Assembly: GCF_006345805.1 (NCBI RefSeq)
Contig: NW_021825959.1
Span: 1-13,815 of the forward strand
Source: Octopus sinensis
Lineage: Eukaryota
Direction of reading: 5' to 3'
DNA: 13,815 nucleotides
The position numbers and the translations under genes were made by a program. Positions 2,773-10,073 of the stretch are shown piece by piece. The notes below the pieces were generated by a model. The model ran no database searches. It worked only from the letters and a program-made list of their open reading frames with translations, and was not told where the DNA came from. Position 1 is the stretch's first letter; each line of letters opens with the position of its first letter.

Positions 2773-2956
2773 CACATACACATATTTTTTCATATATTAT
2801 ATATTATATTATATATACACGTATAGTTGCTTATTGATATTTATGTCTTATATATACTTATATACGTGTATATGTTTGTATGAATGTATATTAATAGTAA
2901 TGGTATGACAAAAAAAGAATGAATGAGACCTCGGTATTATGTAAAAAGAGGTATGT

Positions 2957-3462
2957 ATCTGTAATATAATAAGTGACAATTATTCGGTTGCCATAATAAA
3001 ACTCTGAGCTTCGGATGTCGGGGCGGAAAACTGCTCCGGCATCTCGTCAGTTATCAAGGCAATCAAAAAATGCTATGTAAATGACCGTTAAACAAAGAGA
3101 AATTATTGTGTAATTGACTGTTTTTTTAAGACAAAAGAGCCATTAGAATGACCGTTAAATAAGGGGGAAAACCGAAGAGGAGAAAGTAAAAAGTAGAAAG
3201 TAAAAATGCTCATAGAAATCGCATATGCGCGCATGTGCATACATACATATGCGCGCACGCACACCCACGTACATGTGCCTATATACATATGCTCACTCAC
3301 ACGTGAAACACATACATACACACCCACACATACGCCTATACATGCAACCACACATGTACACATATACATATCCGCACACACGCTCGCACACACACACACG
3401 TGCACATACCCATGCGCGCACAATTATATTCAAATACACGTCTGAAAATACGCGCAGACTAT
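2957..3462 (-). repeat. Left arm of a ~506-bp inverted repeat (ribozyme-bearing unit)
   Basis: Reverse complement of 4031-4536. Only 3 differences over 3051-3165 (115 bp), with lower identity in the CA/TA-rich inner half. Confidence 0.95.
2991..3059 (-). ncRNA. Type I hammerhead ribozyme motif, core-mutated copy
   Basis: Minus strand reads CCUUGAUAA-CUGACGA-GAUGCCGG...CCGACAUC-C-GAA-GCUC-A-GAGU-U-UUAUUAUGG. The fold matches 4435-4502, but A15.1 is G and the cleavage triplet is GUU. Confidence 0.7.
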
Positions 3463-3652
3463 GTATGCGTATGCTCATCTAGTAAGGCAGGTTAGACCCC
3501 GCTACATGTCTAAATTCAAGAACTGAACATTTGGATCATGTCTACATATGGCTAAATATTTGTTACGTTTTTGGTATCCCCAAGATCACAGATAGAACCT
3601 TCTCTTTATATTGTATCCACGTACAAGCATTTCATCTCTTCTTATATATATA

Positions 3653-3727
<75 letters not shown>

Positions 3728-3740
3728 TTTTACATACTTA

Positions 3741-3911
3741 TTCGTTTATTCTTTCTTTTATTTAATCAAGCAAATCGACACCAGGACTTATTCTTTGCAA
3801 GCCTAGTATTTATTCTATCGCCCTCTCTTGCCGAACTGCTAGGTGACTGGGACGTAAATACAGCAGCATCGGTTGTCAAGCGATGTTGGGGGTACAAACG
3901 CAGTCATATAC

Positions 3912-3992
<81 letters not shown>

Positions 3993-4030
3993 CACACACA
4001 CACACACACGACGGGCTTCTTTCAGTTTCT
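3741..4030 (-). mobile_element. SINE fragment with internal (TA)n(TG)n(CA)n microsatellite; tRNA head missing
   Basis: Minus strand reads ...gaaactgaaagaagcccgtcg-[microsatellite]-...cttgacaaccgatgctgctgtatttacgtcccagtcacctagcagttcggcaagagag..., recalled as the body of an abundant octopus SINE. It is related to the fragment at 8425-8547 and is cut off at the inner edge of the right inverted arm. Confidence 0.7.
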
Positions 4031-4536
4031 ATAGCATGCGTGTATTTAGGCATGTATTTGAATATAATTGTGCGCGTATGGGTATGTGCACGTGTGTGTG
4101 TGTGCACATGTGTACGCGGATATGTATTTGTATACATGTATGGTTGCATATATATATGCATATATAAGCGTATGTGTGGGTGTGCGTGTATGTGTTTCAC
4201 GCGAGTGTAAGTGATCATATGCATATAGGCACATGTTCGTGTGTTTGCGTGCGCGCATGTGTAGGTGTGTACGTGCGCGCATACTCGATTTCTATGAGCA
4301 TTTTTACTTCCTCATCTTCGATCCCTCATCCCTTATTTAACGGTCATTCTAATGGCTCTTTTGTCTTAAAAAACAGTCAATCACATAATAATTTCTCTTT
4401 GTTTAACGGTCATTTACATAGCATTTTTTGATTGCCTTGATAACTGACGAGATGCCGGAGCAGATTTCCGCCCGACATCCGAAACTCGGAGTCTTATTAT
4501 GGTAACCGATTAATTGACACACATTATATTACAGAT
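4031..4536 (+). repeat. Right arm of the ~506-bp inverted repeat (ribozyme-bearing unit)
   Basis: Reverse complement of 2957-3462. Like the left arm, it contains an internal repeat of TTTAACGGTCATT. Confidence 0.95.
4435..4502 (+). ncRNA. Type I hammerhead ribozyme motif with complete catalytic core
   Basis: Stem I CCUUGAUAA (4435-4443)/UUAUUAUGG (4494-4502), 8 of 9 paired. CUGACGA at 4444-4450. Stem II GAUGCCGG (4451-4458)/CCGACAUC (4472-4479), 7 of 8 paired, plus one extra C (4480). GAAA at 4481-4484. Stem III ACUC-G-GAGU (4484-4492). GUC cleavage triplet at 4491-4493. Confidence 0.82.
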
Positions 4537-4558
4537 GTATATGTGTGTATGTGTGTGT

Positions 4559-4805
4559 GGAGGCGCGTGGTTTAGTGGTTAGAGTGTCAGCACCATGATC
4601 GTAAGATGGTGGTTTCGATTCCTGGACCGGGCGACGCGTTGTGTTCTCGAGCAAAACACTTCATTTCTCGTTGCTCAAGTCCACTCAGCTTGCAAAAATG
4701 AGTAACGCTGCGATGGATGGGCGTCCCGCCCAGCTGGGGAAAACACACGCCATAGAAACCGGGAAGCCGAGCCCATGAGCCTGGATAGGCTTTAAAAGGG
4801 TGCAT
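4559..4805 (+). mobile_element. tRNA-derived SINE, full length, CORE-like central domain
   Basis: A box TGGTTTAGTGG (4568-4578), B box GGTTTCGATTCC (4611-4622), central GTGTTCTCGAGCAAAACACTTCATTT, followed by an (ATT)n-like tail. Confidence 0.88.
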
Positions 4806-7054: not shown

Positions 7055-7075
7055 TAGGTTAATAAATACATTTTT

Positions 7076-7203
7076 AATCCGAACTTAAAAGTATGAATAC
7101 AGACATTTCTTGAAATATTCCAAGAGCGTTTCATTTTAAATCCGAACTTAAAAGTATGAATACAGACATTTCTTGAAATATTCCAAGAGCGTTTCATTTT
7201 AAA
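7076..7203 (+). repeat. Perfect 63-bp tandem duplication (2 copies)
   Basis: 7078-7140 is identical to 7141-7203 (TCCGAACTTAAAAGTATGAATACAGACATTTCTTGAAATATTCCAAGAGCGTTTCATTTTAAA). Confidence 0.98.
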
Positions 7204-7849: not shown

Positions 7850-7964
7850 TATAACGAGAGAAAAAGGCATATTTGAGATGTTCACTTAAAGAACAATATA
7901 ATACTTATCAGTTTTTTCAACCGAAATTTAATAATTTTATATCAGCAACAAGAATATGTATATT

Positions 7965-8079
7965 GCTATATCTATCACGTTGAAAGCACCGGTTCTCGTC
8001 TGATCACCGAAGTTAAGCAACGTCGAGCCTAGTCAGTACTTAGATGGTGACCGCTTGGGAAACCTAGGTGCAGTAAGCA
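7965..8079 (+). pseudogene. 5S rRNA pseudogene (dispersed single copy)
   Basis: TATCACGTTGAAAGCACCGGTTCTCGTCTGATCACCGAAGTTAAGCAACGTCGAGCCTAGTCAGTACTTAGATGGTGACCGCTTGGGAAACCTAGGTGCAGTAAGCA matches the invertebrate 5S consensus. The A box (AGTTAAGC) is intact and GCCTAG/CTAGGT pairing is kept. There is a 1-nt deletion in the C box (GATGG-TGA), a 1-nt deletion in GGGAA-AC, a degenerate 5' end and no oligo-T terminator. Confidence 0.92.
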
Positions 8080-9745: not shown

Positions 9746-10073
9746 ACGATTACGGGCTGAGAGAAATTATTCAACGTGGCCAATGGTAAGTACTTGAACA
9801 AGACGAATAAAGATATATTCAATACGGTACACGATAAATCTTTGAATTTTGAAATTTAATACTGTTTCCAGAAAATGTGGAAGAATTGTTTGATGGCAAT
9901 CGGGGTTTACTCCTGATGAGAAAGGAAGACAACCTCAAGAACCAAGCAGTCTCTAAAGCGGACTGCTATGATTATTTCACAGCTTTACTTCATCTTCAGC
10001 AAGGAACTATAATATAACAAAGGAATAAGTATATCAAATTTCACGTTAACCATCACTATCATTGTCATAGTTG

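What the first reader, a model, noticed from the sequence alone, without database searches (positions are those of the whole stretch)
4435..4502. Apparently intact type I hammerhead ribozyme with a 1-nt stem III loop and an extra C next to the core
All core elements appear in the right order with three supporting helices: stem I 8/9 pairs, CUGACGA, stem II 7/8 pairs with a possible further extension, GAAA, stem III ACUC/GAGU and GUC, with predicted cleavage after C4493 (seen). A 1-nt loop is sterically implausible as a monomer, which points to a dimeric fold as known for minimal retroelement hammerheads (established plus inference). The unpaired C at 4479/4480 forces a bulge beside the 10.1-11.1 pair, a non-standard feature that strict motif searches would miss.
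Basis: partly seen in the sequence, partly recalled or inferred. Interest (0 to 1): 0.85.

Follow-up and report, generated by a model that had tools for sequence, protein, structure and literature searches.

The report
Relic Penelope-retroelement hammerhead ribozyme motif
A sequence-intact hammerhead self-cleaving RNA motif sits in the tail of a dead, shortened copy of a Penelope-like (Hydra-clade) jumping gene; such elements are already known to carry these ribozymes, so the find is real but ordinary.

Summary
Helix I, CUGACGA, a long helix II, an extra C, GAAA, ACUC-G-GAGU and GUC are all at 4434-4503, with the cut site at 4493/4494.

It is not a free-standing ribozyme. It lies in the 3' module of a 5'-truncated retrotransposon copy (3473-4536, +). 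That copy is joined head to head with an inverted, more decayed copy (2960-3456, -).

ORF-intact relatives in the same genome encode a 708-aa protein with the published Hydra-clade Penelope-like element signatures. The family has thousands of copies. Helices I and II show compensatory changes between subfamilies. The extra nucleotide was present in all 45 sampled copies.

Relatives from other organisms (about 45-50% protein identity) carry hammerheads at the same place. Their helix III is always palindromic, which supports the dimer reading.

Rfam misses the motif and those relatives. Cleavage is untested. The most abundant subfamily sampled, the only one seen with intact ORFs, carries U4-to-C in the core, so cutting may be dispensable.

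Earlier notes of this scan report the same element family elsewhere in this genome. Verdict: new member of a known kind, low interest.

The parts
4434..4443 (+). Hammerhead helix I, 5' strand
   Evidence: Pairs with 4494-4503. Pair 4438/4499 switches U-A to A-U between subfamilies, and 4439/4498 switches G-U to G-C.
4444..4450 (+). Core C3-A9 (CUGACGA)
   Evidence: Invariant in 31 sister copies. The commonest subfamily has CCGAAGA instead.
4451..4480 (+). Helix II: GAUG/CAUC base, mismatched extension, 8-nt loop in this copy. One extra C (4479 or 4480) sits next to the G10.1-C11.1 pair.
   Evidence: This copy has lost one C compared with most sisters. The extra nucleotide is present in 45 of 45 copies. 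Pair 34-43 of alignment A2 is C-G in 20 copies and U-A in 18.
4481..4483 (+). Core G12 A13 A14
   Evidence: Invariant in sister copies.
4484..4492 (+). Helix III: ACUC-G-GAGU, a palindrome with one central G. It forms only 3 bp plus a triloop as a monomer, and 8 bp in a dimer.
   Evidence: The same architecture occurs in relatives from other organisms.
4493..4494 (+). Predicted cleavage site, C17 (4493) / U1.1 (4494)
   Evidence: Position in the hammerhead consensus. C in 55% of sister copies and U in most of the rest. Cleavage was not tested.
4494..4503 (+). Hammerhead helix I, 3' strand
3473..4536 (+). 5'-truncated Penelope-like element copy (3' UTR only). It starts just after the position of the ORF stop codon and ends in ...ATTACA, followed by a TG/TA microsatellite.
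   Evidence: Local BLAST against the longer copy L043. Shared 3' end and variable 5' ends among 30 sister loci. Places 4082-4118 were not sent to any search.
2960..3456 (-). Inverted, shorter 5'-truncated copy of the same element. It meets the + copy head to head within 17 bases.
   Evidence: It is 84% identical to the + copy overall and 93% over the hammerhead module.
2990..3060 (-). Decayed hammerhead of the inverted copy: A15.1 changed to G (3009), C17 changed to U (3000), central G changed to A (3005).
   Evidence: Read. Row L001:85-167:-.
2860..2959 (-). About 100-nt extension beyond the ATTACA end of the inverted copy. It is homologous to the element's own 5' leader (the 'tail' or start of a tandem unit).
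   Evidence: Present in 14 of 32 sampled copies. In L080 it runs on into the ORF.

Best explanation
The motif is the hammerhead ribozyme of the 3'-terminal (pseudo-LTR) module of a Penelope-like retrotransposon of the Hydra clade. In this window it survives in an old, non-coding, 5'-truncated copy that was inserted head to head with a second truncated copy beside microsatellites.

Inferred mechanism in the master elements, from the literature on such elements: the RNA folds into a type I hammerhead. Its short palindromic helix III becomes stable only when two motifs pair (a double hammerhead) or when the element's protein assists. It would then cut after C17 and so help to process tandem or read-through element transcripts.

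This particular copy is a relic with no expected function. Its core is intact in sequence, apart from the family-typical extra nucleotide next to G12. Whether it cleaves is not shown.
For: Repeat family:
- More than 1500 candidate copies of the 121-nt module, 40 scored at 88-94% identity.
- 2277 genome matches to the CUGA form of the motif and 3009 to the CCGA form.
- Common 3' end and scattered 5' ends. Head-to-head pairs occur.

Host element, ORF-intact relatives L079 and L080:
- 708-aa ORF, unit of about 2.6 kb, tandem or pseudo-LTR layout.
- The protein has the published Hydra-clade marks (PMC8557442 section 11): RWK, DKT, a CxCX5C linker (CSCRNKELC), a GIY-YIG without CCHH, then CxxC and CxH.
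- Weak Pfam GIY-YIG hit, E 0.009.
- Atlas neighbours carry RVT_1, GIY-YIG and HTH_animal.
- 924 homologues, mostly on 2.2-3 kb contigs.

RNA structure:
- 81% of cells paired, against 36-51% with slid partners.
- Compensatory switches in helices I and II.
- A U-G intermediate subfamily is visible.

Other organisms: hammerheads at the same place in six relatives' contigs, with a CUGAUGA or UUGAAAA (U3-A8) core and a palindromic helix III.

Dimer energetics.

Literature:
- Penelope-like elements carry hammerheads with a long helix II and a palindromic helix III. These occur in opposite-strand pairs and are weakly active as dimers (PMC4209133).
- Hydra-clade elements have readily detected hammerheads and insert into (TA)n.
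Against: - No cleavage or RNA-end data.
- Rfam Hammerhead_1 gives no hit even at E<=10.
- The unpaired nucleotide lies on the 3' side of helix II, not between A9 and G10.1 as described for Penelope-element hammerheads. Its effect on catalysis is unknown.
- The minimum-energy monomer fold is not the hammerhead fold (-19.4 against -13.0 kcal/mol).
- Pfam finds no RT domain in the ORF, and no phylogeny was made, so clade placement rests on motifs.
- The commonest subfamily, the only one seen with intact ORFs, has C at U4. The family has therefore multiplied without a consensus core.
Confidence: 0.85

Rival explanations
1. The module keeps a hammerhead-shaped fold mainly for a non-catalytic job, for example as the RNA structure that the element's RT/endonuclease recognises near its internal start site. 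On this view self-cleavage is weak, optional or lost.
For: - The commonest subfamily, the only one seen with intact ORFs, has CCGAAGA (U4 to C) in 97 of the first 100 of 1851 exact matches (L079 and L080). It still has helices I-III.
- Published work on a Poseidon element found that hammerhead core mutants did not affect insertion in vitro, that cleavage needed the element's protein, and that no RNA-seq ends fell at the cut site (PMC11167929).
- Naiad elements thrive without hammerheads (PMC8557442).
Against: - Core nucleotides are kept in relatives from other organisms, including a U3-A8 covariation. That is hard to explain without catalysis.
- The CCGA subfamily differs from its nearest CUGA relatives by only a few changes, so retained helices may simply reflect too little time to decay.
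- No binding data exist.
Confidence: 0.1
2. It is a unit of a metazoan non-LTR retrozyme, or an independent hammerhead-bearing SINE that makes small circular RNAs.
For: Type I hammerheads of animals often lie in such elements (PMC7229834 abstract). A tRNA-like SINE head lies right next to it at about 4559.
Against: - No tandem array of hammerhead units in the window.
- Each copy has one motif. Longer copies continue upstream into the GIY-YIG ORF.
- The neighbouring SINE is a separate insertion beyond the microsatellite and has no hammerhead core.
Confidence: 0.03
3. It is a chance hammerhead-like string without ribozyme ancestry.
For: No Rfam hit. A second bare-core match in the window at 9961-9999 (-) shows that such strings do arise by chance.
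Against: Thousands of homologous copies, helix covariation, and homologous canonical hammerheads at the same place in related elements of other organisms.
Confidence: 0.01

Closest known systems
Hammerheads of Penelope-like elements (min-HHRs; Cervera and De la Pena 2014, PMC4209133)
   Same: Type I. Located in the terminal repeat module of a Penelope-like element. Longer than usual helix II. Short palindromic helix III that implies a dimer. Thousands of mostly solitary copies. Frequent pairs on opposite strands 100-700 bp apart. One unpaired nucleotide next to helix II.
   Different: Here the unpaired nucleotide lies on the 3' side (between the CAUC strand and G12), not between A9 and G10.1. 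Helix II is much longer, 13 positions with internal mismatches. Helix III is a full 4+1+4 palindrome rather than absent.
Hydra clade of Penelope-like elements (Craig et al. 2021, PMC8557442)
   Same: Under 3 kb. Single ORF with a C-terminal GIY-YIG. RWK and DKT motifs. CxCX5C linker. No CCHH. CxxC and CxH motifs. (TA)n or microsatellite targets. Inverted 5'-truncated partner copies and one-sided tails. Hammerhead present near the 3' end.
   Different: The published families are mostly cnidarian, with a small number of mollusc families. No phylogeny was made here. Some subfamilies here have a 3' UTR of about 1 kb full of low-complexity repeats. The commonest subfamily has a U4-to-C core.
Dimeric type I hammerheads of newt satellite 2 and viroids (Forster et al. 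1988, as cited in PMC6155905)
   Same: Helix III is too weak as a monomer. Activity is expected through a double hammerhead with an extended helix III.
   Different: Those lie in tandem satellite or rolling-circle RNAs, where two motifs sit on one transcript. Here copies are solitary, inverted or 2.6 kb apart.
Protein-assisted hammerhead of the Anolis Poseidon element PAc (PMC11167929)
   Same: A hammerhead of a Penelope-like element. A tail beyond the RT start site is seen at genomic copy ends.
   Different: The PAc motif overlaps the ORF start and lacks helix III. A different clade. Biochemistry exists for PAc and none here.
Hammerheads with an extra core-adjacent nucleotide (De la Pena and Flores 2001, as cited in PMC4209133)
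   Same: One inserted nucleotide beside the 10.1-11.1 pair is tolerated in natural ribozymes.
   Different: There the insertion follows A9. Here it precedes G12. The details of that work are recalled from the citation only.

Membership tests
Hammerhead ribozyme, type I | Core C3 U4 G5 A6 N7 G8 A9 ... G12 A13 A14 ... A15.1-U16.1, H17, in that order with helix I open | tested here: met
   4444-4450, 4481-4484, 4492, 4493.
Hammerhead ribozyme, type I | Three helices around the core, supported by covariation | tested here: met
   81% of cells paired against 36-51% with slid partners. Compensatory pairs in helices I and II. Helix III covaries between organisms. The events are few and follow subfamily lines.
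Hammerhead ribozyme, type I | Score at or above the Rfam RF00163 gathering threshold | tested here: not met
   No hit at gathering or at E<=10. Relatives with canonical cores are missed as well.
Hammerhead ribozyme, type I | G10.1-C11.1 directly flanked by A9 and G12 | tested here: inconclusive
   One extra C. Either C4480 is unpaired (-13.0 kcal/mol) or C4479 is bulged so that the canonical junction is kept (-9.6 kcal/mol).
Hammerhead ribozyme, type I | Site-specific self-cleavage giving 2',3'-cyclic phosphate and 5'-OH ends | not testable with these tools
Only contig-level runs were found.
Penelope-like-element hammerhead (min-HHR) | Lies in the terminal repeat or 3' module of a Penelope-like element | tested here: met
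   About 200 nt downstream of the ORF stop in L079 and repeated upstream of the ORF in L080.
Penelope-like-element hammerhead (min-HHR) | Palindromic 15.x/16.x positions and loop 3 | tested here: met
   ACUC-G-GAGU. Relatives.
Penelope-like-element hammerhead (min-HHR) | Conserved unpaired nucleotide between A9 and G10.1 | tested here: not met
   No nucleotide there. The unpaired one is on the opposite strand, before G12, in 45 of 45 copies.
Hydra-clade Penelope-like element (host) | Under 3 kb, single ORF, C-terminal GIY-YIG without CCHH, CxCX5C linker, RWK and DKT motifs | tested here: met
   compared with the description read. Pfam GIY-YIG is weak.
Hydra-clade Penelope-like element (host) | Telomerase-like RT domain and phylogenetic placement within the clade | tested here: inconclusive
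   No Pfam RT hit and no solved-structure hit. YKDD and FLDV motifs are seen by eye. Atlas neighbours carry RVT_1. No tree was made.
Hydra-clade Penelope-like element (host) | Insertion into (TA)n | tested here: met
   Many copies end in TA, CA or GATA microsatellites. L079 ends in (AT)n. This window's copy ends in a TG/TA run.
Metazoan non-LTR retrozyme | Tandem short units (about 170-400 nt), each with a hammerhead | tested here: not met
   No such array. One motif per copy.

The most novel reading that the evidence does not exclude
The most prolific subfamily, the only one seen with intact ORFs, carries a U4-to-C core yet keeps all three helices. The hammerhead-shaped module of Hydra-clade elements may therefore serve chiefly as a structural signal for the element's own RT/endonuclease, with cleavage being secondary. 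Alternatively, a C4 core with the 3'-side bulge could still cleave with protein help, which would be an undescribed core variant.
Probability: 0.15. Interest if true: 0.55.

Novelty: new member of a known kind. Interest (0 to 1): 0.2.

Why it matters
On its own this copy matters little. It is a fossil of a known class of ribozyme-bearing retrotransposon, and earlier notes of this scan report the same family elsewhere in this genome.

The family as a whole is a useful natural experiment. It holds thousands of copies in several subfamilies, with intact (CUGA) and core-mutant (CCGA) hammerheads, a conserved bulge on the unusual side of helix II, and an obligately palindromic helix III. Together these bear on an open question: do Penelope-like elements need their hammerhead to cut, or only to fold?

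It also shows that the Rfam hammerhead model misses this whole clade of motifs.

Tried and rejected
- Rfam at gathering score and at E<=10 gave no hammerhead hit on the window, on the ORF-intact element L079, or on three relatives' contigs.
- tRNA scan of the window found none.
- The second core-pattern match at 9961-9999 (-) has no helices and is taken as chance.
- I first read the roughly 510-nt and 1.44-kb copies as non-autonomous elements with a fixed 5' end. That was an artefact of using a truncated copy as the query. The copies are 5'-truncated pieces of a 2.6-kb coding element.
- I first suspected an N-terminal GIY-YIG (Naiad/Chlamys type). This was rejected because the domain is C-terminal.
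- Pfam on the ORF gave nothing at E<=10 for the whole protein and only a weak GIY-YIG hit on the C-terminal piece. The solved-structure search gave only noise.
This is no real excess, as expected for copies decaying neutrally. The informative comparison is between subfamilies and between organisms.
- The supplement of Craig et al. with the Hydra hammerhead drawings is not held.

Full report
**1. The observation.**
Reading 4300-4650 confirms each element.
- Helix I: 4435-4443 with 4494-4502, 8 of 9 pairs. There is one U-U mismatch and one G-U, and G4434-U4503 can extend it.
- Core: CTGACGA at 4444-4450.
- Helix II: a GATG/CATC base with a further mismatched extension. ViennaRNA draws the same helix II.
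- An extra C at 4479/4480.
- GAAA at 4481-4484.
- Helix III: ACTC-G-GAGT at 4484-4492.
- GTC, with C17 at 4493.

The bare core pattern is expected 0.10 times per window and a tighter one 0.03 times. Rfam reports only a 5S rRNA in the window. It reports no hammerhead even at E<=10 on 551 bases.

**2. It is part of a repeat.**
The 121-nt stretch has more than 1500 candidate matches in the window's own 2.7-Gb assembly. Forty were scored, at 88-94% identity, and one of them is an inverted copy in this window.

Among 30 fetched loci the copies share a 3' end (...ATTACA). After that end comes either a TA/CA/GATA microsatellite or, in 14 of 32 copies, an extension of about 100 nt. The 5' ends are scattered between the equivalents of 4030 and 4390. 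Directly abutting inverted pairs are common.

Longer copies (L043 to L046) run upstream through a low-complexity 3' UTR into a GIY-YIG-like reading frame. A search with that peptide found about 14,500 candidate places, some with open frames of about 700 codons.

**3. The host element.**
Two fetched copies (L079 and L080) carry an intact 708-aa ORF. They are 94.7% identical over about 2.6 kb. In L080 the 3' module is repeated upstream of the ORF, which is a pseudo-LTR layout.

The protein shows RWK, DKT, YKDD and FLDV. It has a CSCRNKELC linker (CxCX5C). Its GIY-YIG core (IIYEATV...KKYVGLT) lacks the CCHH cysteines. CGLC and CPH follow. This matches, feature by feature, the published description of the Hydra clade of Penelope-like elements: under 3 kb, a single ORF, these motifs, (TA)n targets, and hammerheads readily detected (PMC8557442 section 11).

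Independent support is modest.
- Pfam GIY-YIG at E 0.009 on the C-terminal piece, and no RT hit.
- Language-model neighbours carry RVT_1, GIY-YIG, HTH_animal and DUF8422, with cnidarian, mollusc and arthropod members.
- 924 homologues at about 41-51% identity, mostly on 2.2-3 kb contigs.

**4. Layout in the window.**
A local comparison with L043 shows the layout.
- The + copy spans 3473-4536 and begins exactly where the ORF stop would be.
- The inverted copy spans about 2960-3456.
- The two therefore meet head to head within 17 bases.

This inverted 5'-truncated partner arrangement is described for Penelope-like elements (PMC8557442). Cervera and De la Pena also noted paired hammerheads on opposite strands 100-700 bp apart.

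The inverted copy's hammerhead (2990-3060) has decayed: A15.1 to G, C17 to U. The two arms are 84% identical, so the insertion is old.

**5. Is the RNA structure conserved?**
In 45 distinct copies from several subfamilies (alignment A2), the hammerhead structure has 81% of cells paired. The figure is 36-51% when partners are slid. Three pairs switch.
- Helix I pair 11-73: A-U in 16 copies, U-A in 14.
- Helix II pair 34-43: C-G in 20 copies, U-A in 18.
- Helix II pair 29-48: C-G, U-G and U-A.

A third subfamily listed has U-G at pair 34-43, the expected intermediate. These switches follow subfamily lines, so the independent events are few.

The extra nucleotide before G12 is present in all 45 copies, as C or U. 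Within the window's own subfamily the core is no better kept than the flanks (0.957 against 0.928), as expected for dead copies.

**6. Relatives from other organisms.**
Contigs encoding homologues at 45-49% identity were fetched. All six with enough flank carry a hammerhead in the spacer between tandem ORFs or beside the ORF.
- Three have CUGAUGA cores.
- Three have UUGAAAA, the U3-A8 core covariation already known from schistosome Penelope-like elements.
- Helix III is always ACUC(N)GAGU or ACAU(N)AUGU, with 0 or 1 central nucleotide.

The fourth pair of helix III changes C-G to U-A, although it cannot form in a monomer hairpin. This is the best evidence for the dimer reading.

Energetics agree: -39.9 kcal/mol for the double hammerhead, -26.0 for two monomer hammerhead folds, and -38.8 for two misfolded monomers.

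Rfam misses these relatives too.

**7. A complication.**
The strict motif occurs 2277 times with CUGA (several diverse subfamilies) and 3009 times with CCGA. The CCGA form is almost entirely one homogeneous subfamily, the one with the intact ORFs. There are 1851 exact 35-mers, and 97 of the first 100 carry C.

All other subfamilies and all foreign relatives have U4. By parsimony C4 is derived, but the C lies in a CpG, so the direction is an inference. From my memory of classical hammerhead mutagenesis, changes at U4 strongly reduce cleavage; I did not check this in a paper here.

The family has therefore multiplied most with a core that should be impaired. This fits published doubts about the need for cleavage.

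**8. Verdict.**
The motif is a genuine relic hammerhead of a Hydra-clade Penelope-like element. It is intact in sequence but sits in a dead copy. Its modest peculiarities are the 3'-side bulge, the very long helix II and the Rfam miss.

Earlier notes of this scan report the same family elsewhere in this genome. I reached the Hydra-clade reading from the protein motifs before seeing them.

Those notes call the genome an octopus. I did not verify that. The assembly size and its roughly 30 large scaffolds would fit, and Penelope-like elements are annotated in octopus genomes (PMC13282606).

Noticed in passing
window 7958-8079 (+): Full-length 5S rRNA match (86.4 bits, E 1e-17), in a region otherwise full of microsatellites. 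Whether it is a gene, a pseudogene or a 5S-derived SINE head was not examined.
   Followed up: no
window 4559-about 4800 (+): A tRNA-like head (ggaggcgcgtggtttagtggttagag...ggtttcgattcc) with a body ending in a TA-rich run, right after the microsatellite at the element's 3' end. Probably a tRNA-derived SINE. ARAGORN calls no tRNA, and it has no hammerhead core.
   Followed up: partly
window 4336-4348 and 4402-4414 (+): TTTAACGGTCATT occurs twice, 66 nt apart, just upstream of the hammerhead. The second copy is kept in all sister copies and, nearly unchanged, in the CCGA subfamily. Its function is unknown.
   Followed up: no
L084:98 and 2534; L085:2282 and 2418; L086:2282: Relatives from other organisms carry hammerheads with a UUGAAAA core (U3-A8 instead of C3-G8) and a U-A or U-U at 10.1-11.1.
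   Followed up: partly
L082 to L085 and L087, 100-250 nt upstream of each ATG; window about 2925-2934 (-): A TTGAGCACT-like word occurs once or twice in the leader before the ORF in every foreign relative. The octopus leader or tail has TTGAGGTCTC at the matching place. It may mark the promoter or the RT start region.
   Followed up: no
L082 and L083: Head-to-tail arrays of complete ORFs with spacers of only 235 and 402 nt, giving units of 2367 and 2513 nt, each spacer with one hammerhead. Two motifs on one transcript would allow the dimer.
   Followed up: partly
G000, e.g. C13:29988995-29989039 (L031): The same genome holds hammerheads that Rfam does recognise: 8 over the cut-off among 74 scored of about 266,000 loose candidates. 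Most are about 42 nt, presumably from other Penelope-like families. Not examined.
   Followed up: no
L043:9160-9600; window about 4030-4290: The long 3' UTR of the window's subfamily contains one or two copies of a degenerate GT/GC-rich unit of about 200 nt plus (TA)n. The CCGA subfamily lacks it, so its hammerhead lies only about 200 nt after the stop codon.
   Followed up: partly
window 7069-7203: A 63-bp tandem repeat, 2.1 copies at 98% identity.
   Followed up: no
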